A stretch of 64,000 nucleotides of DNA from Saccostrea cucullata (taxonomy: Eukaryota), in the NCBI RefSeq assembly GCF_032062105.1, contig NW_026938807.1, positions 372,001 to 436,000 of the forward strand, in the 5' to 3' direction. Shown piece after piece: positions 1,914-64,000 of this stretch. Under the pieces are notes generated by a model, which made no database searches, was not told the DNA's origin, and saw only the letters and a list, made by a program, of their open reading frames with translations. A program made the translations under genes and the position numbers. Within the stretch, counting starts at the first letter, position 1. Every line of letters starts with the position of its first letter.

Positions 1914-1950
1914 CTACCAAAATTTGATTTCCAATCATGGAAGCCGCCAT
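1914..1950 (-). CDS. Probable first coding exon (MAASMIGNQILV-) of an unidentified gene divergent from FAM92
   Basis: Minus strand AAAAATGGCGGCTTCCATG (YY1-type/strong start context), 37 nt open, then ATATCCTTT (U12 AT-AC donor) at 1913-1905. No second exon was identified in the window. Confidence 0.45.
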
Positions 1951-2225
1951 TTTTAAATAATTTTAAATTAACTCGAACATCGAATGTTTCATACTTTTTA
2001 AATCTCATTTAAGGAGACGCAGACATACATTCCAATATTTGGTCACTTTTGATGGCATTTTTTCTAAATAAAAAGAAATGAATAATATTTGTATGTCTGA
2101 AGAGGGTTAAATAATTTAACGTTGGAAATTTAAATCGGAACTCTTCTATATAGAAAACAACATTTGGTGTAATGAGGAATTTCAGAGGTTTTTCGGTCTG
2201 TTTTGTGTTGTAGGGAAAAAAAAAG

Positions 2226-10196: not shown

Positions 10197-12492
10197 GGCC
10201 TCAGTGACGGAGAGTCTGTAAATCAAGTCTGATGACATCATCAGTGATTAGTTTGGCCCTCATCAACACAGCTCTGTTAACCAAACACAAGGCATGGATT
10301 CAGGTGGAAAATTAGGCTATGCAATATTTATGTAAGAAATAAGTTTTAATTCTTGTGCCTACTTGTACTTATGAAATTTAAAGGTTTCCTGCCATCTACT
10401 ATTGAAATTTGAAGAGAAGAGATTAGAGATTTATACACTTGGAATTCTGTAAAGTACAATAATTATCATGTATATTAATGCATGTGTATAAGTAAAGTAT
10501 GTCTTAGTTAACTTTTGAGAACACATATATCTTTAATATTTTCAACAAATATTAAGTATTGGTGCTCATGTGATGAACAGAACTGTACTGACAAGTGGTT
10601 GTTTTTGAGAGTCTGAATATTTTGTATACAGTGAATTTATGCATTTTCTGTGAATGGTTCACACATCCGTCCAGCATTTATCAATAACCAAGTTGTTATT
10701 TAGTATTGTGATATTTTAAAGGTTAACAATGTATTTGGTTGTTGATTTTAAGATTACTTTATTAATTGCCAAGAATAACGTGTTATTTATTATATTTCAT
10801 TTCCCTCTTTCGAAAAGTGCATTGACATTTTACTTTTTTGGTTATTCCAGTAAGAAGCTTAATTTATATATGATACTTTTATGATATAAACCCATGTTTA
10901 AAAAATATTTAATGGCAGTTTATATTTTGTGCCATCATCATAATATGTATATTACATAGGATATTTTAATAGGTTGGAAGGAAAAAATACAAGGGTTTTC
11001 TATTAAAAAGCATGAATTTAAAAAAATAATCTCAGGAAATCTATAGATCTTGCATAAATCTATATTTACAACATGAGTACATTTACCAGTACATGTACAA
11101 AGCATATGATCTGCCATCAATATTTTTTGTTAACTACCACTCATTAATATATCATTTTAGTGCAATTGTTATTTATTTTTAAAAAAATATGCCCTTTTAC
11201 AAGAAATTGGTTCACAAATGCAAAATAAATTTTTCAAGAAAATATAATCTAGAGAGCCATTTTGACATGACCAGTTTTGTTGTGTATTTTCAAATATCCT
11301 CATAAAATTCAAATTTTAAAAAAAATCATGCTATTTCCATCAAAAATTTATACTGGTATTTGTAATATCTGCCTTGAAAGGAAATTTAACATTCGTCAAA
11401 AGGGTAGAAAAAAAGAGTTTTTATATGTTATTAGATTATATGGCATAAAAATCAACAGGTTGTGAGACCAAGAAAACCTGCATTTTAGATAACTTTATAA
11501 CAGTATTTCTGGGCCAATTCTTTTTCACCTTGCCACAGTACACTGAATTTCACATTTTGTATTTATTATAATATCATTATAGCATGAGTAAATTTACTAT
11601 TTGTTTCGTAGTATTGTTTTTAATATTTCTTGTTTGCATTTGTGAAAGTTTATACTATAAATATGTAATAGTAACATGTTAGGTATTTTGTCACAAAGAT
11701 TTGAAATCTGGTTTATTATATAGAACCATGAAAGAATAATTTTGGTTTTCTTGTAATCTAAAGAAAGTATCATTTGGGCCCATGTTATTTGTAGCTAATA
11801 TATAAATTTAATTTCAATATTTACTTGCCAGCAGAATAAAGAAAACCTGTACTGCTTGACAAAAATGAACTGTGTAATTGATATGCCATATGTATTTTGC
11901 ACGGTATTACGCACTCCTCTGTTGTTGTTTTTTTTTCAGCCACTCTATTAATATAAAATTGGTAACTTTTTAAATGAATCATTATAATAAAAATTATCAC
12001 TTGAAACTTTATTATAGACAAACGTACAAATTTATACATGTATGTTTTGAGATTGAAGTTACATAGAATCTCATTCTTACAGAATTTTGTTTCATATATT
12101 CTAATGCCTATAGACTCTGATTTGTTTTTATATTATTATTTACAGGTACATACACTTGAAATTTTTCTTTGAATATTAAATTATTATTTGTGTCGAATAT
12201 CGTTTCTGGCAGTGTATTGAGAAATAACTTTTGCACTACGCTGTTAATGCAATGCACAGTCTGTGATGCAAGGACAGATTCTACACACAAATGTTTGATA
12301 AAAAGCAGTTCAATAAAATCATAATTATAGAGAAATATTCTTCTAATTTTTGTAGAGATTAAAGTTACCAATACCAGATTCCTGATGTGTGCAAAAACTT
12401 TGGATTCTCCATGACTTGTTGAATTGTGCTTTCATTTGAATTTTGACAGTACACATCTTTAACAAAATTGTTTGGTTTTACTTCAGAATTAG

Positions 12493-14387: not shown

Positions 14388-15437
14388 TTAGCAGTATGGC
14401 ATTAAATCATACCCCAAAAGCATTTCAGCTATTGGCTCACTCAAAGAAAGAAGCTTGAAGGGTGGGTGCTCACATATCATTTTTGCATGAGGCAGTGAAT
14501 CTGTGATCCAGAAATTTTCAAATTTGACTTCAGAATCTATAAACTTTCTCCAGGACTCGTTAGGAAACACAGCATGGGTGACATAGGCACTGACTTTTAC
14601 TGCTCCTTTCTCGTACAATGCTTTGGCACACTCTCGCAGTGTTCCTCCAGATTGAACCAGATCGTCAATGATAAGAACATGTTTTCCAGCAGGGTTTCCG
14701 TCTTTGACTTTCACAATCCTACGATTGCCATCCCTGATCTTAACACATGTAATAGGATCGTCACCAGGAAAAAAAGTGTGGAACCTTTTGCATGCTCCAT
14801 CATCAGGAAATGCAACACTCATGCTGTTAAAATCAGGCAGGGTTTTCATTTCCCTCAGCAATAGAGGAACAGCAGATTCAAGCCTTGGGATGACATTGTC
14901 TGAGAAGTAAAATCTTTCTTGAAGTGCATGTATGTCAAATATGACAATCTGAGCTGGCCCTTTCGTTGTCAGTGGTATGCCTGATAATAATGTTGCCATA
15001 GTTTTTGCTGTAGCTATCTGCCCCTCTGTGTCAACACGTTCCATGGTTCCAGTTGGAAAATAAGGCATTATGAAGTGAAAGGAACGCGCTAAATATCTTG
15101 GGAACATGTACAGAACTGACAGCTGCTCAAAAACAATATCGGGAGAGTGGAAACTCCCAATGAAGATGACATCCTTTCCTGCCATGTATTTGACATCCTC
15201 AATGAACAAATTTGGAAACCCATCTGGAAAAGATTTCCACTTAATGGTTTTTCTGAACTGGACTTCTCGGGGTCTAGAGACACTTCCCGAAATTGAGAAA
15301 GAACGTACACCACGGAATACTTGCTTCTCCTCCTGCTGTTCTTTCGGACGAGTAGAACATATATTGGCAATATTTTCTGCTAATGCTTCCATTGAAGGAT
15401 GTGCATAGAGCAGAACTGGGCTGTCATCCCCATTCAT
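14388..15437 (-). CDS. Ribose-phosphate pyrophosphokinase, class II (plant PRS3/PRS4-like), 349 aa, no coding introns
   Basis: First ATG at 15437 (the ORF-track start at 15458 is TTG within a likely acceptor TTTTGCAG). Motifs WKSFPDGFPNLFI, PYFPTGTMER, DIHALQERFYF, AFPDDGACKRF, IIDDLVQSGGT (PRPP loop), SAYVTHAVFP, FWITDS are characteristic of class II PRS rather than animal PRPS1/2. Confidence 0.92.
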   Translation of the reverse strand: MNGDDSPVLLYAHPSMEALAENIANICSTRPKEQQEEKQVFRGVRSFSISGSVSRPREVQFRKTIKWKSFPDGFPNLFIEDVKYMAGKDVIFIGSFHSPDIVFEQLSVLYMFPRYLARSFHFIMPYFPTGTMERVDTEGQIATAKTMATLLSGIPLTTKGPAQIVIFDIHALQERFYFSDNVIPRLESAVPLLLREMKTLPDFNSMSVAFPDDGACKRFHTFFPGDDPITCVKIRDGNRRIVKVKDGNPAGKHVLIIDDLVQSGGTLRECAKALYEKGAVKVSAYVTHAVFPNESWRKFIDSEVKFENFWITDSLPHAKMICEHPPFKLLSLSEPIAEMLLGYDLMPYC

Positions 15438-15759
15438 GCTGCAACTGCAAAATAACAAAATGACAATCTAATCTACGTCGTTGACTCGTTCTTAGTTTCG
15501 ATTCGATGTTATGTTTGTTTTGTTTTCGAAGAGTAAATTTTATTGTATTCTCGATCCCGGTCTTAATTTATTCGGAGACCTTGCAGGTGTCGGCAACTTT
15601 GTATAATTTTACCAATGACTGTAATTGTTTCTGTGCCAATAAAATATCTGAAATAGAGCACTCTATGCATAAATCAGAAAAAAAACTTCCGCGAATAAAC
15701 GCGAAAATTCGCACAATATAACGCGTAAATTTCACGTAGTACATGTACTTATAACGCTT

Positions 15760-16762: not shown

Positions 16763-18500
16763 CAAGTTCAAGTTCATTTATTCTCTCAAAACCATTTAAA
16801 ATACATGGTACATGAGGACAATGAAAAATATTTACAGCATAAATATATTCAGGTCAGAGGTATAAGTTAATGATATACATAATCAGAAAATGGCAATGTG
16901 GGAAAAAGATAAAAGAGAAAAAAACACGTATGATACGTGTAAAAATGAAATAAATGAGGAGAAAAAATTATGGAGGACAGACTAAATCATATATTTTTAT
17001 TATAAACATACAAAGTTTTTTAAGTGACATTGCATCTTGTTTTGTCATCAGTTGGGAAAATTTCAAAATATTTGGTCTAGTAAAGTAATATTCATTAATA
17101 TACTTTTTCCTAACATTTGACAGTGCATTACATTCAAGTTTAAAATGGAATTCATCAGCAACATGTTTAGCATTACAATGTGTATATAATCTTTCATTTA
17201 ATGGTATACATGCCCATCTTCCCAGCTCAACTGGTAGACGGTGATTAGTAGTTCGGAATTTGACAAGTATTTTTCTAAATTTTGATGATAAAATATTTAA
17301 ATAATTTTCACACGCAAAATAATTTGTTTTAAAAGTTTTATACAAAGTGCCTTTAGAAGAACTATTAATATCAGAATGCCATTTTTGTATAGATTGATCT
17401 TGTAATCTTTGTTTAACAACAGAAGTAACCCAGTCTTGATTAGGATTACAATAAAATTGTTCATTCCAAATATGAGATAGACCACATGAGTCAAAAATAC
17501 GATGAGGAAAGTCAATCCAAGGATTCTTACCTATATATTTCAGATTGTGAGTTAGCAATTAAATATTGATATAATATACATGAAATTTTCTTATCTGTGC
17601 TATTCATTAACTTACACCAGAATGAGACTATTCTTGAATAAATAAGAACAGATAGTGGGAAACGCCCTGTTTCACCATAAACCATATAATTCGGGGTATT
17701 ACTTTTCAAGTACAGAATATGTTTCAAAAATTTTAAATGAACACGTTCAATAATATCTAGTTTTTCAAAACCCCAGATTTCACAGCCATAAAGTAACACT
17801 GGTAAAACCATTTTATCGAACAAATCAAGTTGACATTCTACAGGGAGGTTAAATTCTCTTATTTTTCTGATAAGATCATACATTGCCTTTTGGGCTTGCT
17901 CACAGAAATGTTTCTTGGCTTTAAAAGAAGAGCCAGATCATGAGAAAATGATACCAAGATATTTAAATTCTTTGACAGTTTCGAGACTCTTGTTATTATA
18001 GTAAAATACCCTTTTGTTTAAGGGACCTTTTGAAAAAATTAATATTTTAGTTTTCTCAATATTTACTTGTAATTTCCACTCTGAGCAGTAGCTTTCAAAT
18101 TCATTCAAAGCATTTTGTAAATCATCTGGAGTTTCTGCTAAAATGACAGTATCATCGGCATATAAAAGTATAAGAAGTTTCAAATACACACATAAGTCAT
18201 TTTCTATAGAAGTAGTAAGACTTTGTAAACCAATTATATTTCTATCAACAAGATAATTCTCTAGGTCATTAATACAATGAAAATAAAAAAGGAGATAAGT
18301 TTTCACCCTGTCGGACTCCGACATTACAAAAGAAAAAATCGCTTGTTGTACCGTTCATCTTTATAAGTGATTTAATTCCCTGATACATATTTGTAATATA
18401 CGTAAAGCATTTGCCTTTAATTCCATAATTTAAAAGTTTACTCCAGAGACCGTTTCTCCAAACAGTGTCAAACGCTTGCATGAAATCTATAAAAGCACAA
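16763..18500 (-). mobile_element. 5'-truncated, frameshifted non-LTR retrotransposon (LINE; RTE-X/L2-like, clade uncertain)
   Basis: Four ORF pieces (18269-18481, 17938-18324, 17527-17883, 16968-17558) carry RT motifs FIDF.QAFD, GVRQGENLSP, LLYADD, FKYLG and C-terminal LLYGCEIWG, DEFHF.LEC. 3' end AATAAATGAACTTGAACTTG. Confidence 0.9.
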
Positions 18501-19259
18501 TTTTAACTTGAAAACATCTGATAAGTAAACGAAAGGATAAAGATTTTCATTTAATTCTGAAATTCTGTTTCATTTCATTCGTAAAAGCTTAGCAGAAGTT
18601 ATGGACAGTGCCATGATCAGTTAGTGAAGAAATCTGTTTGATTCAACTTAATAAATAAATAAGTAAATAAAGCGCATCGGACATCTATACAATAACTTCA
18701 TTTGCGAAAACATATTGATTTAATTTTCGTATAAAATTGTTCATGTATTTCGCGAAAACCGCGAAACCTTTGCATTATTTAACGCATAACTTTCGAGTTA
18801 TAAAGCGGAACTTTTGCGATTATAATAAACGTGTTCTAAACATTTGCTGTAAAACCGAGACATTTGCACAAGTTTTTAAATTCTCTTTTTACCCGTTACA
18901 TTGTGTCTTTCTCAACGCTGTTCAGTCTATGCAAGTTTTTCAAAAGTAAAAAGGTATATTAATTATTATAAATTTCGGGGGAAAGATTAAAAAAAAAGTT
19001 TTGAAAAACGTGACAAGCGGAGATCTCCCTGAGAAAGAAATCAGTCTAAAGAATCTCTACGATTCTATAAATGAAAAAAAATATTTAAAGAAATATTCAT
19101 TTTATCTATTAGTAGGGTTTTGAAAAAAAGTGCAAAATTCTTTATACTAATCTGTTCTATATTCTTGCATATAATTTCTCTTTTACATCATCTGAGCAAT
19201 GTCAATAATAAATCGATAGAAGTTCCCGTCTACGTTCATGTTTCTCATCTGTCAGTCAA

Positions 19260-21578: not shown

Positions 21579-24500
21579 TTATGTGGAGTCGTAATTAACA
21601 GGTGGTTTCTTATTCCTGTTTTCTATGGCTAGTTTCTGTCGGAGTCGCCTGACTTCGTTAAGCAGAGCGAGCTCCTGTTTATCAAATGTCCGGCTACTCC
21701 TCTCTAGTGACACAGAAGACTCCGGATCAGAAGATGTCTGGAGGGTGTTCCAGGCCGAGGACTGAGTCGTGTTGTTGAGGTACGACTGACCAAGTCTTTG
21801 TTCTACAAACAAAATATTAAAACATTTAAAGCTTTTTGTAAATTTTTAGAAGCAAATGTATAACCCTCTTAACAGAAGAGCATGGGTCTGTTACAAATCA
21901 AACATATGTACATGTATTAGGGGTTATATATGTAAATCAGCTGAAAAGAAGCAATGTTAATGGTCCTAAAAATAATTAAAACTGATATAAATACATTTAC
22001 AGTTCTCTTAAACCTAACTCTATGCTGGCATGATAAGACCCCTGTTTGTGTGACTTACTTTTGGTGGCGTACAGTACGCCCTGATTGTATGACTTACTTC
22101 TGGTGGCGTACAGTACGCCCTGTTTGTATGACTTACTTCTGGTGGCGTACAGTATGCCCTGTTTGTATGACTTACTTCTGGTGGCATACAGTATGTCCTG
22201 TTTGTATGACTTACTCCTGGTGGCGTACAGTACGCCGTTTGTATAACTTACTCCTGGTGGCGTACAGTACGTCCTGTTCGTATAACTTACTCCTGGTGGC
22301 GTACAGTACGCCCTGATTGTATGACTTACCTCTGGTGGCGTACAGTACGCCCTGTTTGTATGACTTACTTCTGGTGGCGTACAGTACGCCCTGTTCGTAT
22401 GACTTACTTCTGGTGGCATACAGTATGTCCTGTTTGTATGACTTACTCCTGGTGGCGTACAGTACGTCCTGTTCGTATAACTTACTCCTGGTGGCATACA
22501 GTACGCCCTGTTTGTATGACTTACTTCTGGTGGCGTACAGTACGCCCTGTTTGTATGACTTACTTCTGGTGGCGTACAGTACATCCTGTTTGTATGACTT
22601 ACTTCTGGTGGCGTTCAGTACGTCCTCCGTCATGGACTTGCCGTGTTCCTGAGCGTTCCTGGCCTCGTCCTCTACAAACTCCAGCCGTCGTTTATCTGCC
22701 TTGGTGGCCGCCTGCTTCTGTTCCTCCAGCTCCTCTTGCTTATCCTCCACATCTCTCTCCTGTCAGGAGGAAAATGTCATTATTTACATTAATTCATAAA
22801 CTATTAAAGGAAAAGGAGAATTAAACATTGTACATGCATAGTAAGGATACTGACCCTTTTCTCCTGACACTGCAGCATCAGATCATGGACTTCCCTCTCT
22901 AGCTGCCTGTTCTGACTGTTTGTCTTTGAGAGCTGAAATAAAAGAGGTAGTTGTTTTTTCAGTTTCAATTTATTGTCATGAGAAATTTTTACCCCACCAT
23001 TTTGGCCCTGAAATAGACACAATGGACCAAAACATGTGGATTAATCAATTTTGATGTGACTATGAAACTTGCAGATGCTGTTATGAAGAGAAATTTTTCC
23101 TTTCAGGATTAATAAAGCAATTAATACATCACTAATTACCAAGTACTTATGTTTACTTTTCTTTTTACCAGGTATATGTACAAATATAACATGTTTGATA
23201 CATAATCTAGTTCATAAGGAATATCATAAGGCCATAATAAATAAATTGCTAGATTCTCATCCAAATTTTTTTAAAAATCGAGGCAGGTGGGCAGCTTTTA
23301 TTTTATATTTTTTATTTTTTCAATTTTACAGATTTTTTATTTACCTAGTCAATCGGTGTAATTTTATCTACAATACCCGAATAAAAGTCATAGTAAAGGT
23401 TCAATTATCTTAATATATATGCATGTATTACAGCAATCACCATCTTTTCAGCTGTCAAAATCATGTTGACTTTCGCGGGATTTAAAACGAAAGTAGGATG
23501 GTAGATGAATATCGATCCCGATCAGAATTAACACGAAGAAAAACAGAAATAAAAAAATCAAGGCGAGGGTATAAAATTGGGGCGGGCGGGGATGAGAATC
23601 TACGAATATTTTTATTATGGCCTAATATTCAAATTTTTATTACATGTCCAAATTAGAGAGGGCAACAAAACAGATACTGATTGAGCCCTTGGACAACAAA
23701 CTGAACTGTTGCAGTGGTCTTCAGCATTGGTCAACAGGTCAGTTCCTGATTTAACAACTCTCTCCAGACTTGTACAATCCCCGATATCATCCGAAGACTC
23801 CTCTGACCTGATGTATAACGTACCTGTACACTCTTAGTCTCTCTCTCTAAGTCCTCCACTCTCCGTCGGTACTCAAATTCATTCTGGGCCCAAGCTTCTA
23901 TATTCTGCTGTGCTGCCTTAGCCAAGTTTTCTTGTAATTGCTAAAAAAAAATGAGATTACAGATAACAATAAAACAATCAAATGACATTACATAGAATTA
24001 GATCAGATGATTACTGATTTTACCTTGCGGATTTCCACCTGTCTCTCCCTCTCTGCGTCTCTCAGTCGCTGCTGGATCCGTTCCTCCAGCTCCGCTTGCT
24101 TTCTGTGCATGTCTTGTTCTGTTCTCAGCTGCTGTCCAGCCGTGGCAAAATCCCTGAACAGCTCCTAAACAAAGGAAAAGGAGTGATTATCAATCTGCAA
24201 CTATAACAGCTTAAACAAGACTGCTCAAAAACATTGTTTTACATTTATAATTTTGCAACTTATTTATCAATGCTGAGGATTCTGACCAAATAAATATATT
24301 TCATAATTGTTTACCTGCTCAAACATTTTCTTCTGAAGTTGGAGCTCTAGGTTTCTAATTTCTGCCTCCTCTAATGCAGTTTCAGTTTCTTGGTCTCTTA
24401 GTAAAGCCTGAAATATACATAGATTTATAACAACTTGTACAGTACTTGCAGAGCAAAAGAGTTGAGCTGTTTTAAAATGATCATTTTTAATACCTTTCTC

Positions 24501-27500
24501 TGGACTTCATCATCCAGTCGTTTGAGCTCTGACTCTCGCTGTTGTTTCTGGAAATGGAGAAACTTTCTCCTGGCAGCATCCAACAACTGAAGTTCCTTCA
24601 GTTTCACTTCCCTGTTCATCGCATACAGCCTAAAAAATACATTTGTCTGATTAATAGTAAATACTCTGAGGAACTCATATATATAATAAAAAAAAAATCA
24701 TAGATCTAAAAGATTTTGGGAATACTTTGTGAAAAAATGTAACATGGTTTAGTGAACAAATACATGTACATAATACAAAATGACAGAAGACTGGACAGCA
24801 GCATGTTTGACTGACCTCTTCCTCTGGTCCACTAGTTTCTGCTCCTCGGTCTGTATCATGTGCCTCCTCTTCTCCTCGGCCTCCAGGAGGAGCTGCTGCT
24901 GTCTGTACCAGGCCTCCTCCTCCTGCTGTCTCTTCACCGTCTCCTTCTGCATCTCCAGGGACACTTGTCTATACATACATGTAATATGTTATTATTAAAC
25001 ATTACAAGTAACTTAAAAAAGTGAATGTAGCAACAATATTGATCCTCTTGTACCCTGCATGTATTACAAGTATCATAAGATTTACATTCTTTAGCAAGAA
25101 AGATTTTCAGCAGAACAATACTAGTAACACTCTATCATCCAACATTCATGATGCAGCATAAATATCAAAGACCATATAAGACTTTTCCATGCATAATTTC
25201 CATAGAAAAGATGCCAGAAATACATATTTTATCTGGTTAACAGTAGTCTGATAAGTGTACACGAAGCAGACATTTAATTCTCACTGCTGTAATATCTGAC
25301 CTTTGCCTCATGTAATCCAGTTCCTCCTGCCTGATTCTCTCCCTTTCCTGTACCTGGTAGTCCACAATGAACTTGGGGTACTTGTTAAACACCGGGTACT
25401 GTCCGACAGTGAGGGGACGGAATTCCTCTAGGGAGTCCCGGGGGTGTATGTCCCCTGGGGTGGCCTCCATCAGTCTGTAGGCTTCCTTTATCACCCTCCT
25501 CACATCCACAGCATTACGATGATGGTAGAAATACTGCACAGTGAAGGAAATATAAAATGAACAGATCATGATCACTTGATTATATATTAATTTTCATACA
25601 TTTGTATTGTACCATGTGATTGCATCATAAATTGTAATTACATATTTAACTGTGTAACAATTTTTAGTTTAAAATTTCAAGAAATGAACATTAACAACTA
25701 GGTATTTTTCTTCAACCTTGGGTTTAAATGAACCATTTTATTTTCAGAATTGTAGACTTACTCTGAAGTCGTCCAGTTCTACACACTGCATCAGTGGTCC
25801 CCGGGCAGACATGGCGTAAGCAACCACCACCATCAGTAGAAAGGAGGGGTGGTTAGTGAAGACGTTATCAAACAGCATCAGCCACTCGTCCCGAGTCAGG
25901 ACCTCGGAGAACAGGGTCTCCAGTAACGGCCATGCATAGATCTGCAGCAGGAAAAAATAACACTGATCACAACAGGATAACTTACAAATTAAAAATACAT
26001 AAAATAACTGCCCAATCTAATTAAAATCAGACTTCTTAGATCTGCGCGGTGTATTCACACTTACGCAGAGTGAATACGGCACGGATCTAAGAAGTCTGAT
26101 TTTGATTAGATTGAATAACTGCCAAGCCAGCATTTAGTTCTCTTCAAGTGTTGAGTAATTTATCAGCTATGATCACAAAAGCTGATTCATCAAAATGACT
26201 TCCAGCAAATGTTCAAAGATTTAACTTTTTTGTAGATGAAGAAATTATATAGATGAATGCCAATATAGATTTCTATAAATGTGTACAGTTGAATTATGTG
26301 TGCAGGCTGATGAATAAATTCAGGCACTACAAAATGTGGTAAAACTACACAGGGAAAGCATTTTACATATTGGTGTACTGATCTTTTCCTGGCATTGGTG
26401 ATTTCATTCATGATGAGATAATTTTGAATGCATATGTAACAAAAAATTGTAAGAATTCTATTACTATTGGTGTAAATGTCAACAATCAAAAAGGTAAGTT
26501 TATAACATTTAGCTGTGTATTTTTTTCAAAATTATTTTCAGAGAGCTGCATCAACTGAATCACGAACGTAGCTGAAGGAGAAACTTGTTAAAAAGTAACT
26601 CCTTCCATCATCCAGATACTGTACAGTTGATCCAAAATATGCATGTCCAGTATTTTCATTGTCCATATTTTCAGTACAATTGTACATTGAAATACATGTA
26701 TATTAACATGATTAAATAAATCACTTTTAATCAGGTCCAGCCCAAAGGCTTTTTCTACCTATATACCTTTTAATAGCTACCTATACATGCTATAGGTATT
26801 TACAGTATTTAAACCTACTTGAAGTAGCTTCTTCTGTCTATTTGGCCTTAATTCATATCATGTTTATTGTTATAACAGTGACTGTTTAAAAAAATTTAGT
26901 ACTCATCACATTGTGCTGTTCCCCACCCCTGCCATAAAATAAAAGTTAAGCAAACATAGGTAAAAATAGCTACTGAAGTAGGTTGACATACCTAAGTAGC
27001 TAAAACTAGCCACATAGGTAGAAATAGTCTTTGAAATGGACTTAAGTCCTGCTTATATTTGCTTAAATTCATAATTTTTTTTTAATTTTCCAAATTCACT
27101 TTTATAAACCATTAAAAAAAAATTATATCTTAAATATTTACAATTTATTGCATACTGTACATAATTATTAAAACATTTAAATACAAATTATGTACTTACA
27201 AAGCACTATACAAAAGCAACATGCACTAAAACATCATTTACAAGAGCTCAAACTGGAATGTCTTGCTTTGATTTTTTTGACATAGTCAATTCAAGCAAAG
27301 AAAGTCCACTTCAAATCAGATAATTTCTCAGTAAAAGAAACAAAAGACTATGCACTTCCATTACTTTCCTCACTTGACAAAAGAAAGTCAAATTCTGGTT
27401 TCTCAAATCCTTGGTTGAAGGCGGTAGTATTGACAATGTCAGAAAGTTGTTGAATGATCTCCCCATACATTCCAGGCTGTTTGGACGAGCTTCCTGTTAA

Positions 27501-30500
27501 CTCTGAACAAATGCTCAACAACTTTTTCTCCACTTGCATTTTCTGCTTCTTTGGTTTGGTGTTGCTGGTCCGATTTCTCTTATTAGCGAACCAGGCCTTG
27601 ACTTGTGCCACAGTTATCCCCCCTTCTCGAGCCAGCTGTTCCTTCTGTTCATCAGAAGGGTATGGGTGGTTGATGTTTTTCTCGAACCACTGTGACATGA
27701 TGGACGTGGCCTTGGAGTTGAGTTGACGAGAGCGTGGTCTCGTGGTTGTGGAACTGTCGGGGAGTTTATCCATGCTGATTTTGAGGAGCTGTAGACTACT
27801 ATACACTCGGTTAGTGAGGTGAGATCGCTGCTTTTCATGGTAGGCATGTATGCTGGTCATCTCTTTCAGATACTGTGATGGTGTATCAATATGATGAGCC
27901 TTTAGTTTAGCTACAGCATCCAGTCTCTGTGTTTCTATGGTGGCTAGCTGGGTGTTGTAAAATGTTTTTAGTTCCTGGACTTTGGGGTTGGAGTTCGCAG
28001 AAAATTCCAGGAATTGCTGCTGTAATGTTGTTTCTTGCACCACTGCATAAGAATATTCTGGCGTTGACTTGGATTCACAAGAAGGCACAGTATCCTCAGA
28101 GCACAGAGCATAGGGAACAGTCACCTGAAGACAGTCTGACACCAGAGTGGCCTGTAAATCCTCAAACATGGGGTGGGATGACAACCTAGCCAGTCCTTCA
28201 CATCCTGTCACATTCAGCTTAGAATTCTTAATTATTGATGCCATAATCAAAATGTTCAAATGGCAAAAAAAGTTCTGAATATTCTTCAAAGTCCAACACA
28301 GTTGAATTGTAACCTGTCACACACTTTCTCTGAGTAATAAGGAACAAGTTTGCAGGGCTGGAAGTCATTAAGTCTGTGAGCCTGTCCATGTGACCTCTGG
28401 TAATTAGTGTGGAGTCTCAAAGTCACCCAGATTTATTTTCCCACAGAACAGTGTTCACTGAGACCCTACCTTGACACATGCATTTCACAGATCATGCCTC
28501 TCCTGAACACCTACTCAGACTAACTGACCAATGAATAGCTCCCATTGCATGACAATGGACCAATCAGAATGCTTGGTTTGCCTGTCATGATCCTGTGTAT
28601 CACAGTTATTATTTTTAATGATACACAATAAAACAAATGATAATTGTGTTATTGTTGTTACAAAATGCAACCAATGAAGTTTGGCTTGGAACAAAACAAG
28701 GTGATTGAGAGGCAATCACATACAGTCAATATAGGAATGGATACAGGTAATTTTCCCAGGCTCTCAAGCATTATTATCATTCTCAATCAACACTATAATT
28801 TTGACATTACCTTAATTTTTTAAGTTTTAATTTTTTATTTCTCAAATGAGATCCTTTTTTCAATGTCTAATAATAATATAAGTGCAATGTTGTTTTTTTG
28901 TTTTAAGTCACTTCAGTTAAAAAAAATTGTATCTTTTGGAATCAGAATAATTTGTCTTCAAATAAAATTATCAAATGGTAACATATATTTATTTTTGCAC
29001 CTTGAGTCTGAGATAAACGTGAGCTCATGAGTTCTATGGCCCTGGAGCCTGATTTTCTAATGGACTTTTGCAAGGAGCACTGACTATTACAGTTGACAGC
29101 TTACTTTTACATTAGAACAATGTATGGAAGCTCTTTTACAAATATAAATAGCCCAATATTTAATTCAACAAAAATAACTGCTTATTTCAATGCACATATC
29201 AGTCGACCTTGAAGAAAACAACAACAACCCTACCCTCAACTCCCGTCCTTCATATTTTAGTGTTCCTTATACCATACAATTACACTTCTACTAGTATTGA
29301 GAAAAAATTATTGTAAGGTAAACATTTCGTTCAACAACAAATACTATGACTGTCTGATGAAAATGCAAATGTGCATGAATATTTTTAATTCAATTGTAAT
29401 CATGCAATTTCTTAGGTAGATAAAAGGAGTTGTGGAAAGTCGGTCAATTGGATGAAATCAGAACACAAGAGAAGAAGAGCAATGGTCAAGCAGTGGTTCT
29501 AAACTATGAAATTCTACCCAATAAACAAAAACATGTTTTGCCTCAGCAAAACAATATTTTCTTTAACAACAAATAAAGCACAAGACATGATAATTGGAAT
29601 TTGGAAAGGATATTTTTCATCATTGAATATAAAACAAACCTAGATGACTATATCCAAGGGTAAATAATACATAACACATGTAGACCACACAGATTTAATT
29701 TACACCCAATACATTTTTTTGCACAAATAATTTTCTCATCTGAAAGCTTCTCTTGAGATTTTGCTCCCATCATTTTCAGGACAATAATTACTTTTTTCTT
29801 TTGTATTCTGACAAAATGCATGGTACCCTGGTATTGCTTTTAAATATGAATGTTTATGCCACTTATAGTTTGAACTTAGCACTTTCTAGGAAGTGCATAG
29901 TCTGGTTCATAAAATAACTTTTAAAACAGCCAATACATTCCACATCAAGAATTTTGTTTTAAAGCATTTCATTATGAACTGGAATCTAATAGCTACCCTT
30001 TTTTTAATCTCAATGATTTTCTCTAACAAATTACACAAGACCTCTTTCCATGAATTAAATGCTTGCTTACTCATACATATATATTTAAGTAAATAAAATG
30101 ACAAAACAATAAAAAACATTAGTAGAAAATAATTTGCAGCTATATTAAAAGTAAAATAGGTTCTGAATACTTGAAACATGAAATAACGTTATCGGGTACT
30201 TGTTGCTAACACCTGATTAATCACCTGAGATATACGAACTTACCTGTGATGTGACCCCGTACTTAACAAAGTGCTGTAGTAAGTATTTATCATGGTGAGC
30301 TAGGACATTTTCAATCATGGCTAGAATGTTGATGGGTGGATTAGGAAAATACTCAAACCAATGCTCTCCCCAGTTTACTGCAAAAGAAAATTGAAATATA
30401 ATAAAAAAAAATTAAAATTATAAAAAATGGTTGGTAATAGGACAGGATTGTGAAATGGAAAAAGTAACAATGATATCCCTACATCATAGATGCTTTACAC

Positions 30501-33500
30501 TGTTATGTTGATAAGTCCCCCTCCTTAAATTTTTCTAATCATATATTAAAAAAATCATCCTCTCCCTAACAACCACAATACAAGAAACAAGGTAGCTATA
30601 GATTTACATAAGTCCCCTTGATCCTGCCATCCTTCAGAAAATTGAGTTTAAAAGATTAAATTAATCTTTCATCCCTATTCTTAAATAATTTTTGATCCTG
30701 TGACCTTGAAATTTGACCTACTTTTCAATTTTTTTTTAAAAAAGCTACAGCTTGTTTGCATCTCAAGAGATATAGCTCTCAAAATTTTCATTACGTTTTA
30801 TGTGCAATACTTTTGACAAGACATTTTAGAATGCATTATGAAAAATACCTACCCATAAATGATGCTAAGATTTCAAAACAAACAAGATGGTTATTCTGGA
30901 ACAGTTTGACAAATGGGAATGCTAAGACAGGAAGGTACTGGGTTTCTCCAAAGATCGGGGACCAGTGAGCAAGGGCAGATAATATCCTGAAAAATACAAT
31001 AGTAAGGACATATATTGTACAAAATCTATAGTCTACATGTATACATTATATCTTAATGAATATTAGCATTTACTATGTATGTGTACAAGTCTACACTACA
31101 AGATATAAAAACATTCGTTTACATGTATATCTTTTCTGAGCATTTGTAGTCAAAGTAAGGGTATCAACTTGTATAAAAATACATTGCAGCTTTTTAAATT
31201 CCGAAAACCAACTTTCAGAAAAAGCTGATTGTAGATTGATGCTTTGCTTACATCAGAAGTGTAATCATTGACAAACATTGTGTATTGAGGTTTAAGTTCA
31301 ATTAAAAAAAAAAGTTTATGCATACCTCTGCAAGATGCGTAACAGTTTCCTGCTTTTGACAGGGTAGTCTTCGTGAATTTTGGAATATGCTGGATGTGTG
31401 CCTTTGTCAACAAGGGCAGCATATGCCGTGTGGTTCTCTGGTAATCGCAGAATAGACCTCCAAATAAACATTCTATATTTAGCTGGGTATTCTCCGTATC
31501 CCTTTAATATGGCCTTTAATCTGTCAGCATTTAATGTTTCTGGAAGTTCCTTCTACAACAGACATACATCAAATTATTTTTTTTAATCATCTAACACACA
31601 ATTTAAACTGTTTTTACAATGATCTCAAATGTAACAAAATCCAAAGTGTGCTAAATATCATTTTCAGAAATTCTTTGTTACACTAAAAAAAATCTTCATA
31701 TGGAGTACGAAACTTAGATTTAACATAACTAATACGATCAGAGAGAACATGCTGGTTCTTTTAACTTTTTAAAATTAATTCTTCTTTTATGTAGAAAGTA
31801 GTTAATGACATTGACCTCTATATCTGAGTCCTCTAGGCGGTTTTCTTTACCCCTGGCTGGAGCTGATAATGACCGGTTTTTCTTGAGTATGGATGACCGC
31901 TCAGTGGACATTGTCTCCGACATCTTGTTGTTGGTGACCACTTTGACCAGAGGAGCTGGAGGCTGTAAAGAACTTCTTATCATGAAATGATTGCACATTG
32001 CATGATGCTTGATCTAATTAAAACTAGATGTATACATATAAGTCTTGTACATTTCTGATTTGTTTATTACTAATTAGTGCTTGTTTCGAATCTGAATCCA
32101 CCACTGACCCACAACAGTACATGATGCCATACAAAACAAGGGATCAACAAATTACCTTGCTGAGTTCATCAGACATGGTGTGCAGATTGTAGACATGTAA
32201 ACTCCCGTCCTCCATGACCGCCACTAGATACCGCCCCCCGGGACTGACCGTCACATTGTTAATTCTGTTCTCCACCCCTCCCACATCAAACAAAAGCTTA
32301 CAAGTGTTGATATTGATAAACCGAATAATTCCATCCTGGCTTAAAACTCCCAATGTCTGAAATAAAAGAACGATCTGATTTTTCATAATCCAAAAAATTG
32401 TTTTATCATAAAGACAAATTGGCTATGTATACACAAATATGTATGTTTTTAAAAAATGTTTGTTTTGAAACCTTGAGATAAAATTACAATTATGTTTAAT
32501 TAAACAGTTTAGTGTCAAACCTGACTAGCTCCTGCATCAAAGTTATCAGGTAGAAACACAAGTTGTTTGACTGTAGTGACTTTAATTGGTAACTCTATAA
32601 TCCTTAGCAGTCTATGAGTGTCTAAATCCCAGAGATGAATAAACCGGGATCTTCCTCCAGCTGCCAAAAGTCTTCCATCCCTATGATATGGAAGATGAAA
32701 GGAAAACATTAAATCAACATTTCCATCATCAGAACGCATACATACATGTGAATCAATCCAATTTCTTCCATAACATAATAAATGAACAAAATACCTTGTG
32801 GGAGCATATGCCTTATAGTGGGGGGATTTGCCAGGAGGAACAGGGAGCTGGTATTTACAGTTGAGGGTGTCAGACTCCCATCCAAATATTGTGTCATCCT
32901 TAAAACCGGTGATGATGGTGTTACTCAGGGGCAGGAAAAACACCTGGAATACAACAAAAATATGATGTATATTGTTACTGCAGTCTGTTTACATCTTATA
33001 TAATATACATGTATATGAAAGGAGAATGATTCCATTCCTAAATTGGCCTGTCTTAAGAACTTTTTAAAGATTTTTCAATTATTATAGAACATCAGTGTAA
33101 AGACTTTTTATTACAAAAACAAAATAATGAAATTTTATATTCTGAGATACATGTAGAAACACAACCTTTAAAATGCACTTGCTGTAAGTAAATTCCAATT
33201 TAAATGTAAAATGTTTAGAGTAACTATAATATAAATACCTGCACAATGCCTACGTCCTCCTTGATATTTAGTTTTCGTTTGCGCTGGAAGGTGTCTAAAT
33301 CCCAGAGCTGTGCGACGTCAAAGGAAGTTGTGAGGGCGTACCTCCCCGAGGCATGGACTGATATACTGCTGATGGCAGACTCATGGCCCTTCATCCAGGC
33401 TACCATCTCCTTTGTATCTAAAAGATTTTATCATCAAGTTCTTACTTAATTTTAACATTTTATATACACATATAAATAATACTTTATTATAGTAATTGGA

Positions 33501-34466
33501 CAATTATTAAATTTAGCCATAAATATGCTAAATATTTTATACAGCTTACAGTTTTATTGTTAACATTACAACATTCAGGATTAATCTTAATTCACGAAAA
33601 TGTATATTCATGTACCTGTATCAAAACATTTCAATGAATAGTCTGATAAGCCGACAAGGAATTCTGTTTTTCTGCGCAAGTTGTAGGCTAGTGCTGTACA
33701 TGGATGGCCACATTTCTGTGTGAGAGCAAACCTATTGGAAAAATCAAAATAATAAAAAAAAAAATAGGCACTCAGAATAGCATTTAACTTATATGCAGCT
33801 GTATATTTATTAAATCAAGATGTTACAGAATATGAATCTAAACTTTGCTTCAATGTAGGTCTATAGGGAAATATGCAAAATGATTTTTTTTTTAAAACTG
33901 TACCTGTTTTTGTTGAGGTCAAATAAAAATATGTTCCCTTGGTGATCTCCCGCTATGAAGCAATCTCCGGTGTTATCAAATGATGTGTGTAAAAACCTTA
34001 TACTCCTTCCATTCTGTGATAAAGGTCCAGACTGACTGTTGGTTATTGAAACCATTAACCTACAAAGTCAAAAGAACTAATTCACTTTTTGCCATCTCAC
34101 TCTAGAAAAAGGAAATTCAATATGCAAGTTTCGTGATTATCTCCCTTGGTGTGCGTTTATGAAGAAATACAGTGAATAGCTTATTATCACTATAAAAGTA
34201 GACATATATTGAGCTAAAGATTTCATTAACAAAACATTTTAACAATTCCGGTCCTTGCTAATATTGAAAAAAAATTATCAGTCTTCCAGCTGTTTTTTTT
34301 TATAATAATTGTTTCATCTTTCTTGGGGTATATATAGGATTTGAATTTGAGCACTCTTCCAGCAGCCGTTATGTTAAATGTAAATTTACCCATTGTCAGT
34401 TGATGGAGTTGGTTTTCTGTGCCAAATTTTTCCTGATGTTCTTTTACAAACATCTAAAGACTGCAT
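21579..34466 (-). CDS. TBC1D31: TBC1 domain family member 31 (WDR67): WD40 + Rab-GAP TBC + coiled coil
   Basis: N-terminus MQSLDVCKRTSGKIWHRKP. 21 GT-AG exons: 34466-34390, 34059-33904, 33731-33616, 33417-33239, 32943-32795, 32680-32521, 32356-32156, 31962-31816, 31552-31326, 30986-30853, 30377-30244, 25941-25762, 25533-25301, 24968-24816, 24629-24494, 24407-24315, 24164-24024, 23940-23824, 22932-22855, 22759-22603, 21802-21579. Motifs GHESAISSISVH, LWDLDTFQRKRKL, LKGYGEYPAKYRMFIWR, GQYPVFNKYPKFIVDYQ. Confidence 0.93.
22030..22625 (-). repeat. 39-bp minisatellite seeded on the TBC1D31 penultimate-exon donor
   Basis: Unit GGCGTACTGTACGCCACCAGAA|GTAAGTCATACAAACAG. 15 GTAAGT copies (plus-strand ACTTAC from 22053 to 22597), all 39 bp apart except one 37-bp step (22209-22246). 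Confidence 0.95.
23230..23622. mobile_element. 393-bp MITE, PIF/Harbinger- or Zator-like
   Basis: ~33-bp TIRs GGCCATAATAAATAAATTGCTAGATTCTCATCC / GGATGAGAATCTACGAATATTTTTATTATGGCC with TAA on both sides. Confidence 0.85.
26013..26113. mobile_element. 101-bp palindromic mini-MITE with 10-bp TSD (Mutator-like)
   Basis: Near-perfect fold-back CAATCTAATTAAAATCAGACTTCTTAGATC...GATCTAAGAAGTCTGATTTTGATTAGATTG. AATAACTGCC at 26003-26012 and 26114-26123. Confidence 0.85.
26733..27043. repeat. Decayed long inverted repeat (old MITE)
   Basis: GTCCAGCCCAAAGGCTTTTTCTACCTAT pairs with ATAGGTAGAAATAGTCTTTGAAATGGAC. AACCTACTTGAAGTAGCT pairs with AGCTACTGAAGTAGGTT. Confidence 0.65.
27348..28244 (-). CDS. 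Divergent TALE-class homeobox protein, 298 aa, single exon, nested in a TBC1D31 intron (spiralian-specific TALE/SPILE-like)
   Basis: Homeodomain RSRQLNSKATSIMSQWFEKNINHPYPSDEQKEQLAREGGITVAQVKAWFANKRNR with the TALE PYP loop. First ATG at 28244 (ORF-track start is TTG). AATAAA at 27149-27144. Lies in intron 25942-30243. Confidence 0.9.
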   Translation of the reverse strand: MASIIKNSKLNVTGCEGLARLSSHPMFEDLQATLVSDCLQVTVPYALCSEDTVPSCESKSTPEYSYAVVQETTLQQQFLEFSANSNPKVQELKTFYNTQLATIETQRLDAVAKLKAHHIDTPSQYLKEMTSIHAYHEKQRSHLTNRVYSSLQLLKISMDKLPDSSTTTRPRSRQLNSKATSIMSQWFEKNINHPYPSDEQKEQLAREGGITVAQVKAWFANKRNRTSNTKPKKQKMQVEKKLLSICSELTGSSSKQPGMYGEIIQQLSDIVNTTAFNQGFEKPEFDFLLSSEESNGSA

Positions 34467-63908: not shown

Positions 63909-64000
63909 CTGAAAAGTATCAAAAGAAGTACTGTTGACAAATAGTTAAGAAATGGTAAGAAATGCATTGATAGATACCCATAGTTTTGATAGCAAACATA

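What the first reader, a model, noticed from the sequence alone, without database searches (positions are those of the whole stretch)
27348..28244. Lineage-specific TALE homeobox gene nested same-strand in TBC1D31
Seen: an intact intronless 298-aa ORF with its own AATAAA inside the host's largest intron, on the same strand. Helix 3 reads WFANKR, combining Irx-type A50 with the Pbx-type NKR. I recognise no PBC, MEIS or IRO domain, and the N-terminal helical region (QELKTFYNTQLATIETQR...) is unfamiliar. Known: spiralians have expanded novel TALE genes (SPILE and related oyster clades) active in early cleavage. Inference: a retroposed or divergent member whose poly(A) site could truncate host transcripts.
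Basis: partly seen in the sequence, partly recalled or inferred. Interest (0 to 1): 0.75.

Follow-up and report, generated by a model that had tools for sequence, protein, structure and literature searches.

The report
Oyster SPILE-D homeobox gene inside TBC1D31
This is an oyster copy of SPILE-D, a known spiralian early-embryo homeobox gene, sitting without introns inside an intron of the centriole gene TBC1D31, and relatives elsewhere suggest that it lost its introns by being copied back from RNA.

Summary
An intact 298-aa ORF lies on the minus strand (28244..27348). It sits inside a 4,302-nt intron (25942-30243) of a minus-strand WD40 + RabGAP-TBC + coiled-coil gene. The only PDB sequence matches of that gene's TBC exons are TBC1D31 chains.

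RNA of a close relative (5-7% diverged) splices the host across this intron. The same RNA covers the ORF as a separate, unspliced unit (27203-28628).

The gene is not lineage-specific. It is the orthologue of Spiralian-TALE-D:
- It is 48% identical to limpet NfSPILE-D over 95% of its length.
- It is 86% identical to the Magallana gigas protein and 80% to the Ostrea edulis protein.
- The D group is one branch in my homeodomain tree.

The "unfamiliar" N-terminal helices are the published PADRE-type domain. WFANKR is invariant in the clade. The gene is under purifying selection: 11 of the 12 coding differences shown are synonymous.

Three points are new here:
- An unnamed relative (L057) has the same gene in at least 6 exons.
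- Its homeodomain intron lies at exactly the position of the PBX homeodomain intron.
- Another relative (L054) has an intronless copy nested, same strand, in VPS16 rather than TBC1D31.

So the intronless state is derived, probably by retroposition. I found no sign that the gene truncates host transcripts. The scan's earlier notes hold no such finding on other DNA.

The parts
27348..28244 (-). Coding sequence of the SPILE-D orthologue: 298 aa plus stop, a single exon.
   Evidence: ORF list. Pfam Homeobox_KN. Full-length orthologues.
27552..27740 (-). TALE homeodomain, aa 169-231. Helix 3 WFANKR is at 27576-27593.
   Evidence: PDB alignment to PBX1/Exd over aa 169-231. AF2 helices 177-189, 198-208 and 212-226. 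QVKAWFANKRNR..NTKPK is invariant in 45 of 45 rows.
27768..28052 (-). PADRE-type helical domain, aa 65-159, in the 'modified', slightly longer D-clade form.
   Evidence: Aligns to 6 of the genome's own A/C-like paralogues. A profile of this region finds 155 representative proteins; 113 of 144 scanned carry a TALE homeodomain. The literal PADRE motif stands at the start of the match in P0084. AF2 gives three long helices at pLDDT above 90.
28140..28193 (-). Conserved N-terminal motif (L..L.SHPMF..LQATL), aa 18-35.
   Evidence: Nearly invariant columns P25, F27, L30 and L34 in A1.
27435..27473 (-). Conserved C-terminal helix motif YGEIIQQLSDIVN, aa 258-270.
   Evidence: A1 consensus YGxIIQQLSDIVN. 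AF2 helix 260-274.
27203..28628 (-). Extent covered by collinear RNA contigs of a close relative. This is the transcribed unit, with no splice joint inside it.
   Evidence: tables 2, 5 and 8: X6 contigs 27203-27520, 27589-27983, 27987-28175 and 28146-28628; X1 contigs 27203-28378. Intron stretches 26185-27169, 28746-28942 and 29337-30124 have depth 0 or at most 0.41 in X6.
27144..27149 (-). AATAAA hexamer, 199 nt after the stop. Its use is not shown.
   Evidence: RNA contigs end at 27203.
25942..30243 (-). Host (TBC1D31) intron of 4,302 nt that holds the gene.
   Evidence: Joint 25941->30244, CT..AC, in 4 of 4 runs.
30244..30377 (-). Host exon upstream of the nesting intron (TBC domain).
   Evidence: Joints 25941->30244 and 30377->30853.
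25762..25941 (-). Host exon downstream of the nesting intron (TBC domain).
   Evidence: Joints 25533->25762 and 25941->30244. PDB hit to TBC1D31 chain 9qzc_AE, E 1.1e-3.
21582..34067 (-). Mapped part of the host gene: WD40 exons 34067..32147, TBC exons 31552..25301, coiled-coil exons 24988..21582.
   Evidence: Open frames. Weak WD40 and RabGAP-TBC Pfam hits. PDB hits to TBC1D31 chains only.

Best explanation
The ORF is this oyster's single orthologue of Spiralian-TALE-D. That clade is the SPILE D-clade; its bivalve members were earlier filed under 'TALE clade VII' and its limpet members under 'TALE-XVIII'.

It encodes a sequence-specific transcription factor with four conserved parts:
- a short N-terminal motif;
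- a three-helix PADRE-type domain, inferred to be a protein-protein interface;
- a TALE homeodomain with the clade-invariant recognition helix WFANKRNR;
- a C-terminal helix.

Shown: it is transcribed as its own unspliced unit of about 1.4 kb from inside a 4.3-kb intron of TBC1D31, on the same strand, at levels that vary independently of the host.

By orthology with limpet NfSPILE-D and mussel MvSPILE-1, it most likely acts as a maternally supplied mRNA and protein of the egg and cleavage stages. In those species expression becomes restricted to animal-pole blastomeres and takes part in early cell-fate specification. This step is inferred, not shown here.

Its lack of introns is derived. The ancestral D-clade gene had at least 5 introns, one of them at the PBX homeodomain position. 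The oyster gene therefore most likely descends from an old processed (retroposed) copy that replaced the parent. Its nesting in TBC1D31 reflects where that copy, or a later relocation, landed.
For: Identity. The protein is 86% identical over 100% of its length to M. gigas K1PG94, 80% to O. edulis LOC125664086, and 48% over 95% to 'Spiralian-TALE-D' of Nipponacmea (E 3.8e-75). It is about 44-54% identical to mussel, scallop, Mya, Dreissena, Ruditapes and Haliotis proteins. The genome's own next-best locus is only 34% identical (E 9e-26).

Tree (48 rows x 71 columns). The 19 D rows, including the window and NfSPILE-D, form one side of a branch with support 85/85, recovered in 92% of bootstrap trees. 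The genome's own Meis/Pknox/Tgif/Irx-like rows are apart (96/87*).

Single copy. There is one D-type locus among the 31 places found in the genome. [quoted passage not shown]

Domain evidence.

Transcription. X6 depth is 56-115 over the ORF against 10-29 on host exons, and about 0 on the rest of the intron. The TALE:host ratio reverses in X19 (<=2.4 against 5-20).

Selection. All 12 ORF differences listed lie at third codon positions. 11 are synonymous and 1 is E->D.

Maternal, animal-pole expression of orthologues: PMC8524836 sections 7 and 13. Egg-to-blastula expression of oyster TALE1-4 and TALE7-14: PMC5322547 passage.

Intron history:
- L057 carries a collinear D-clade gene in at least 6 exons with GT..AG borders.
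- L056 and L057 have an intron at ITV.Q^VK.WFANKR, phase 0.
- The genome's own PBX has ITVSQ|gt...ag|VSNWFGNKR, the same position and phase.
- The genome's own Tgif-like and Irx-like homeodomains are uninterrupted there, and the Meis/Pknox-like frames break 3-4 codons later.
- All 10 of the genome's own SPILE-like loci hold PADRE plus homeodomain in one open frame.
Against: - The RNA evidence comes from runs labelled 'organism A', whose reads are mostly 90-95% identical to the window. This is a close relative or a divergent strain, not certainly the same species. Tissue and stage are unknown to me, so maternal expression is not shown here.
- Only 12 of the ORF differences are visible; one search says 106 more across the stretch are not shown.
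- No retroposition hallmark remains (no poly(A) tract, no target-site duplication). Stepwise intron loss cannot be excluded.
- The organisms behind L054, L056 and L057 are unnamed. Polarity (introns ancestral) rests on the shared PBX intron position alone.
- D-clade support in the homeodomain tree is moderate (85/85, not starred).
- I could not map K1PG94 to 'Cgi_TALE4', because the supplements are closed.
- A function for SPILE-D itself, as opposed to other SPILE genes, was not seen in what I read.
Confidence: 0.85

Rival explanations
1. An ordinary SPILE-D orthologue that lost its introns one by one. It sits in the TBC1D31 intron by chance rearrangement, with no retroposition and no interplay with the host.
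For: No poly(A) remnant or target-site duplication was found. Introns make up a large share of such genomes, so small genes often lie in them. The host splices normally across the gene.
Against: All of the at least 5 introns seen in L057 are absent at once, both here and in L054. Two intronless copies sit in introns of two unrelated hosts, TBC1D31 here and VPS16 in L054. That means at least one relocation.
Confidence: 0.35
2. A recent, lineage-specific retrocopy or decaying pseudogene of a TALE gene. This is the strong form of the first reader's 'lineage-specific'.
For: The gene is intronless and lies inside an intron.
Against: The frame is intact. Full-length orthologues occur across molluscs. 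11 of 12 visible coding differences are synonymous. It is transcribed above host level in 2 of 4 runs. No closer parent exists in the genome.
Confidence: 0.02
3. An alternative terminal exon of TBC1D31, or a host-TALE chimeric transcript. In this reading the ORF has no promoter of its own and its poly(A) site truncates host mRNA.
For: The gene is on the same strand as the host, and an AATAAA lies downstream.
Against: No joint links host exon 30244-30377 to the TALE unit in any of 4 runs. Coverage is 0 between 28746-28942 and 29337-30124 in X6. The TALE:host depth ratio changes from about 4:1 (X6) to about 1:8 (X19).
Confidence: 0.05
4. A divergent PBX (PBC-class) orthologue.
For: PBX1/Exd are the best PDB sequence matches (E 2e-14). 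In the tree the genome's own PBX joins the SPILE cluster in an unresolved fork (87/79). Relatives of the gene share the PBX homeodomain intron position.
Against: The genome has a true PBX with a PBC domain above Pfam's cut-off. The window protein has no PBC hit. hhalign of A1 against the genome's own PBX PBC-B exons gives probability 0.15%. 0 of 144 PADRE-profile hits carry PBC. Homeodomain identity to PBX1 is about 49% by my count on the alignment, and position 50 is A rather than G.
Confidence: 0.03

Closest known systems
SPILE D-clade: NfSPILE-D (Nipponacmea fuscoviridis), MvSPILE-1 (Mytilisepta virgata), and the C. gigas D-clade gene
   Same: Full-length similarity (48% identity over 95% to NfSPILE-D). 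TALE homeodomain with QVKAWFANKRNR..NTKPK. A modified PADRE domain upstream. Conserved sequence outside the homeodomain. One copy per genome (PMC8524836).
   Different: This is a new species copy; the best database match is 86%. Its nesting in TBC1D31 and its intronless structure are not mentioned in the papers I could read. 'intron' occurs 0 times in PMC8524836 and PMC5322547, 'intronless' 0 times in PMC6118893, and 'retro' 0 times in PMC6118893. Maternal expression was not tested here.
PBX / Extradenticle (PBC class of TALE homeobox genes)
   Same: The closest canonical homeodomain. Intron-bearing relatives of the gene share the phase-0 homeodomain intron between Q and V of ITV.Q^V..WF.NKR. 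Both have K at homeodomain position 52.
   Different: No PBC-A/B domain is detectable. Position 50 is A, not G. Homeodomain identity is only about 49%. The genome has a separate true PBX.
The genome's own SPILE A/C-like and B-like paralogues (PADRE-bearing TALE clades VI/VII/XV/XVII and two-homeodomain TALE-IV)
   Same: PADRE-type region plus a WFANKR-type homeodomain in one open frame. Seven A/C-like and two B-like loci were found.
   Different: They are 31-37% identical. They lack the D-clade N- and C-terminal motifs and the NTKPKKQK tail. Several lie in tandem pairs.
Intronless TALE retrogenes of mammals such as TGIF2LX (retrogene status recalled, not tested)
   Same: A TALE homeobox gene without introns, derived from an intron-bearing family. 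The TGIF2LX homeodomain is a weak PDB hit (E 6.9e-6).
   Different: An unrelated TALE class. Here the presumed parent is gone, and the copy is the only D-clade gene in the genome.

Membership tests
SPILE D-clade (Spiralian-TALE-D) | Homeodomain groups with NfSPILE-D rather than with other TALE clades. | tested here: met
   IQ-TREE on 48 homeodomains. The 19 D rows, including the window and P0012, form one side of a branch (85/85; 92% of bootstrap trees). No shuffle of 500 scored as low.
SPILE D-clade (Spiralian-TALE-D) | Highly conserved sequence outside the homeodomain (PMC8524836, Table 1). | tested here: met
   A1: 45 full-length rows. The N-terminal motif, PADRE-like helices and C-terminal YG.IIQQLSDIVN are conserved. 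48% identity over 95% to NfSPILE-D.
SPILE D-clade (Spiralian-TALE-D) | [quoted passage not shown] | tested here: met
   aa 65-159 align to 6 of the genome's own A/C-like paralogues with extra residues in the D row. Local HMM E-values run from 6e-9 to 1e-4. The literal PADRE motif stands at the start of the matched region in P0084. The published alignment is in supplements I could not see.
SPILE D-clade (Spiralian-TALE-D) | Single copy per genome. | tested here: met
   One D-type locus in G000. The next hit groups with the A/C-like paralogues.
SPILE D-clade (Spiralian-TALE-D) | Maternal transcript, later restricted to animal-pole blastomeres. | not testable with these tools
   Transcription is shown in 4 of 4 runs, strongly in X6 and X1. 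Stage and tissue of the runs are coded.
PBC class (PBX/Exd) | PBC-A/PBC-B domain N-terminal to the homeodomain. | tested here: not met
   No PF03792 hit at E<=1. hhalign probability 0.15% against the genome's own PBX PBC-B exons. 0 of 144 PADRE-profile hits carry PBC. The single-exon comparisons have low power.
PBC class (PBX/Exd) | Glycine at homeodomain position 50 (WFGNKR). | tested here: not met
   The window has WFANKR. PBX1 and the genome's own PBX have WFGNKR.
Processed retrogene | All introns absent where relatives or the parent have them. | tested here: met
   L057 has at least 6 exons and L056 a split homeodomain. The window ORF and L054 are uninterrupted.
Processed retrogene | Poly(A) tract and target-site duplications at the insertion. 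| tested here: not met
   None found. This is expected to decay in an old insertion.
Processed retrogene | An intron-bearing parent gene elsewhere in the genome. | tested here: not met
   No second D-type locus among the 31 places found. If this is a retrogene, the parent was lost.
Nested intronic gene | Lies wholly inside an intron of a host gene that is spliced across it, and has its own transcript. | tested here: met
   Joint 25941->30244 in 4 of 4 runs. A separate collinear unit spans 27203-28628 with no joint to host exons.

The most novel reading that the evidence does not exclude
SPILE-D began as a multi-exon duplicate of PBX: relatives share the phase-0 homeodomain intron. It has since been replaced more than once by processed copies of its abundant maternal mRNA. 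These copies landed, same strand, in introns of unrelated housekeeping genes: TBC1D31 in oysters and VPS16 in the organism of L054. The oyster gene would then be an orphan retrogene, perhaps relying on its host's open germline chromatin. The whole intronless mollusc SPILE expansion may descend from such a copy.
Probability: 0.35. Interest if true: 0.55.

Novelty: new member of a known kind. Interest (0 to 1): 0.35.

Why it matters
SPILE genes are the best candidates so far for the lineage-specific regulators behind spiral cleavage fate maps. Knowing that the D-clade gene is single-copy, strongly constrained and separately transcribed in another oyster adds little by itself.

The gene-structure evidence is more useful. 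A homeodomain intron shared with PBX gives a concrete, testable origin for a family so far treated as TALE 'orphans'. The contrast between intron-bearing and intronless copies nested in different hosts points to retroposition of a maternal transcript as the way the family moved, and perhaps expanded.

Nesting on the same strand as a centriole gene also offers a natural case for testing transcriptional interference, although I saw none.

Tried and rejected
1. PADRE as a degenerate PBC-B domain. By eye the two looked alike. hhalign of A1 against the genome's own two PBX PBC-B exons gave probability 0.15% and 0.14%. The A1 profile search of the whole genome did not list those exons at E<=1. The PADRE profile found no PBC-bearing protein among the 144 scanned. 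Not supported. The power was low, because single exons were compared and I had no PBX family alignment.

2. Fold search. The AF2 model (mean pLDDT 72.3) against PDB by Foldseek matched only homeodomains, with nothing at E<=0.001. No analogue was found for the helical domain. pdb_via_wide was not tried.

3. Naming the host through the ESM Atlas. Recognition was weak, and a RabGAP-TBC cluster came only at rank 4. Pfam on single exons gave only sub-threshold WD40 and RabGAP-TBC hits. PDB sequence search settled it.

4. Conservation of the TBC1D31 nesting.
- The metagenome scan gave 7 loci. None has a TBC1D31 exon in its flanks at E<=1e-3.
- L051-L053 are too short (flanks of about 0.4-1.6 kb) and of unknown molecule type, so they say nothing.
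- L054 shows a different host.
- Conservation among oysters therefore stays untested.

5. Taxon names for the distant D-group proteins. The listing of cluster members returned no names for 10 of 10.

6. Retroposition hallmarks. None were found.

7. Strand of the TALE transcript from reads. The few raw reads (X18, X19) all had the first mate on '-'. The same libraries show both directions on host exons, so I draw no strand inference.

8. Literature.
- Morino et al. 2017 is not held. I know it only through citations in the papers read.
- Searches for nested or intronless TALE genes in oysters found nothing relevant.
- The SPILE searches found only PMC8524836, PMC6118893 and three preprints or papers with single mentions.
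- Supplements are closed. They hold the PADRE alignment, the gene-ID tables and the full trees, and may already list this gene's C. gigas ID.

Full report
**Observation**

The ORF is real but lies on the minus strand. The ATG is at 28244 and the stop occupies 27350-27348, giving 298 aa. One search lists the TTG-start version, 27348..28289, and one search shows the sequence.

Pfam finds Homeobox_KN (E 5.5e-17, aa 186-225) and Homeodomain (1e-8), and no PBC, Meis or IRO family at E<=1. Against PDB sequences the best matches are PBX1/Extradenticle homeodomains (E 2e-14 to 5e-13). Meis1/2 (about 3e-12), PKNOX1 (1.4e-10) and TGIF (7e-6 to 1e-3) follow.

Helix 3 reads WFANKR. A50 is shared with the genome's own Irx-like genes (WFANARRR). 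K52 is shared with PBX (WFGNKRIR).

An AATAAA on the gene's strand lies at 27149-27144, 199 nt past the stop.

**Host gene**

Minus-strand open frames from 34067 down to 21582 carry, in order, WD40-like pieces, TBC-like pieces and coiled-coil pieces. Pfam hits on single exons are weak: WD40 at 1e-4 to 3.5e-3 and RabGAP-TBC at 0.073.

Two TBC exons, searched against all PDB sequences, hit only two distinct sequences. Both are chains of entry 9qzc: 'TBC1 domain family member 31' (E 3.3e-9; 1.1e-3) and 'Rab-GAP TBC domain-containing protein' (1.3e-10; 0.28).

[quoted passage not shown] That is the order seen here, so I accept the host name.

**RNA evidence**

I laid four runs on 25200-31100 at 90% likeness or more:
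- X18 and X19, raw oligo-dT RNA reads;
- X6, contigs of an RNA-seq run;
- X1, contigs of a run whose type is a guess.

Most reads are 90-95% like the window. The runs therefore come from a close relative or a divergent strain ('organism A').

Three host joints appear, all CT..AC (minus-strand GT..AG):
- 25533->25762;
- 25941->30244, skipping 4,302 nt (X19 11 reads, X18 1 read, one contig each in X6 and X1);
- 30377->30853.

The ORF thus lies inside a spliced host intron, on the host's strand.

In X6 and X1 collinear contigs cover 27203-28628 (X1 only to 28378), with no joint inside and none to a host exon. X6 depth is 56-115 over the ORF against 10-29 on host exons. It is 0 (or at most 0.41) on 26185-27169, 28746-28942 and 29337-30124. 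In X19 the relation reverses (<=2.4 against 5-20).

So the unit is transcribed on its own and regulated apart from the host. Contigs end at 27203, short of the AATAAA, so the 3' end is not fixed. If the leader really reaches 28628 it carries 8 upstream ATGs.

**Selection**

One search lists 12 differences inside the ORF, and says 106 more across the whole stretch are not shown. All 12 fall on third codon positions. 11 are synonymous and one is E137D. Nine of the ten listed in host exon 25303-25533 are also third positions.

**What it is**

The protein database search returned 67 hits:
- 86% identity over 100% of the length to M. gigas K1PG94 (named 'PBX4' or 'PBX1' by its sources; C. virginica is in the same 90% cluster);
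- 80% to O. edulis LOC125664086;
- 63% to an unnamed protein;
- 44-54% over 87-100% of the length to proteins of Mytilus, Mizuhopecten, Argopecten, Mya, Dreissena, Ruditapes and Haliotis;
- 48% over 95% to 'Spiralian-TALE-D homeobox protein' of Nipponacmea fuscoviridis (E 3.8e-75).

An alignment of 45 of these (A1) shows conservation along the whole length:
- an N-terminal motif;
- a helical region;
- a homeodomain with QVKAWFANKRNR..NTKPK invariant;
- a C-terminal YG.IIQQLSDIVN motif.

In the window's own genome the gene is unique. The next loci are 31-37% identical.

With the A1 profile I found 31 places:
- seven single-frame loci with a helical region plus homeodomain (A/C-like);
- two loci with two homeodomains (B-like);
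- canonical TALE and SINE genes.

This resembles the counts given for C. gigas in Table 1 of PMC8524836 (A/C 7, B 3, D 1, E 1).

**Tree**

I built a homeodomain tree of 48 rows and 71 columns with IQ-TREE LG+C20. The 19 D rows, including the window and NfSPILE-D, form one side of a branch. Support is 85/85, recovered in 92% of bootstrap trees. One unlabelled row, P0066, falls inside.

The genome's own A/C-like paralogues are the sister group (93/86). The genome's own PBX joins in an unresolved fork (87/79). The Meis-, Pknox-, Tgif- and Irx-like rows are apart (96/87*). The labels for these canonical genes, other than PBX, are my recollection of their motifs.

The tool warns that there are few columns and several long branches.

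**The N-terminal region**

Paps et al. 2015 (PMC5322547, passage) named an approximately 87-aa region upstream of the homeodomain of TALE clades VI and VII the PADRE domain. Phuangphong et al. 2021 (PMC8524836, section 5 passages) state that all D-clade genes have a similar, slightly longer region.

Here aa 65-159 align with six of the genome's own A/C-like paralogues at 26-29% identity, with extra residues in the D row.

A profile of that alignment, run against 1.84 billion representative proteins, found 155 at E<=1e-3. Of the 150 listed I scanned 144. 113 carry Homeobox_KN and none carries PBC (six known D-clade rows were left out to fit the size limit).

The best hit, P0084, has the literal letters PADRE at residues 134-138, where the match begins.

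AF2 with A1 gives three long helices (63-82, 87-116, 122-159) at pLDDT above 90, then the homeodomain, then helices 230-250 and 260-274. Mean pLDDT is 72.3. Foldseek found only homeodomains.

**Function**

By orthology only. NfSPILE-D and MvSPILE-1 are maternal, uniform to the 8- or 16-cell stage, then concentrated in animal-most blastomeres (PMC8524836 sections 7 and 13). Oyster TALE1-4 and TALE7-14 are expressed from egg to blastula (PMC5322547). I could not test stage here.

**Gene history**

A scan of metagenome contigs with A1 gave 7 loci. None has a TBC1D31 exon in its flanks.

L054 (20.8 kb) has an uninterrupted D-clade frame at 9933-10811 (+). It lies between Vps16_N exons (1045-5752, +; E 8e-11, 1e-6, 2e-12, profile positions rising) and a Vps16_C exon (18259-18504, +; 1.5e-17). 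That is also same-strand nesting, but in a different host.

L057 carries a collinear D-clade gene in at least six exons. The A1 profile positions are 2-57, 58-87, 87-116, 120-163, 172-218 and 213-246. L056 has the homeodomain split likewise.

In both, the homeodomain intron lies between Q and V of ITV.Q^VK.WFANKR, in phase 0, with GT and AG borders. The genome's own PBX has ITVSQ|gtcagt and, 4.8 kb on, cag|VSNWFGNKR. That is the same position and phase.

The genome's own Tgif-like and Irx-like homeodomains run through that point, and the Meis/Pknox-like frames break a few codons later.

Exon by exon, L057 scores best against L054 and its nearest proteins, with summed bits of 228-238 against 191 for the window. 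Intron-bearing and intronless copies therefore coexist in one subgroup.

I read this as follows:
- introns are ancestral, which points to descent from a PBX duplicate;
- the intronless state is derived, most simply by retroposition;
- this happened more than once, or was followed by relocation.

Against this reading:
- no poly(A) tract or target-site duplication remains;
- the organisms of L054-L057 are unnamed;
- PADRE shows no detectable similarity to PBC-B.

**Novelty**

The family, the clade, its domain and its expression are in print. This species' copy is new to the protein collection (best match 86%).

I found no mention of the intronless structure, of retroposition or of nesting in the text I could search. 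'intron' occurs 0 times in PMC8524836 and PMC5322547. In PMC6118893, 'intronless' and 'retro' each occur 0 times, and 'intron' occurs twice, one of those on TALE-IV homeodomains. The searches added nothing. Morino 2017 and all supplements were not seen.

**Verdict**

This is a correct observation of a known kind of gene. The 'lineage-specific' and 'unfamiliar domain' readings are corrected, the 'retroposed' idea is strengthened, and the 'truncates the host' idea is unsupported.

Noticed in passing
L054:1045-18504 (unnamed contig from metagenome contigs): An intronless D-clade TALE ORF (9933-10811, +) lies between Vps16_N and Vps16_C exons on the same strand. It is nested in VPS16 rather than TBC1D31.
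   Followed up: partly
L057:159-2833 and L056:255-1248: D-clade-like genes split into several exons. The homeodomain intron is at the same phase-0 Q^V position as in PBX.
   Followed up: partly
L058:4810 and L058:4974 (G000:C11018, about 328.9-329.1 kb): The genome's own PBX has two tandem copies of the exon that encodes VSNWFGNKRIRYKKNI..., each behind a cag acceptor. They look like mutually exclusive alternative exons.
   Followed up: no
window 26013-26113: A 38-nt inverted repeat (89% complementary, 25-nt loop) lies just inside the host intron. Many RNA reads match it only partly, with loose ends and a 'goes back 29' joint. It is probably a repeated hairpin or MITE-like element transcribed elsewhere.
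   Followed up: no
window 28943-29336: This intronic stretch has RNA coverage and loose ends in all four runs, while the surrounding intron has none. It is probably a repeat or a small separate transcript.
   Followed up: no
window 28245-28628: If the longest RNA contig marks the leader, it carries 8 upstream ATGs. Depth there is about a quarter of that over the ORF, which suggests more than one start site.
   Followed up: no
window 16971-18502 (-): Fragmented reverse-transcriptase ORFs (RVT_1, E 6e-14) of a retroelement lie 3 kb beyond the host's 3' end.
   Followed up: partly
window 7232-7552 (+), 14391-15467 (-), 42807-45386 (+), 49000-64000 (-): Neighbouring genes by Pfam: FAM92, an uninterrupted 359-aa open frame with PRPP-synthetase-type domains, a TauD-family dioxygenase, and CNOT1 (NOT1_connector 2.7e-61, Not1 1e-36).
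   Followed up: partly
G000:C9542:91665-97007 and G000:C11446:335010-343261: A/C-like SPILE paralogues lie in two tandem pairs, 5-8 kb apart. One copy (C9542:96486-97007) has an in-frame TGA.
   Followed up: no
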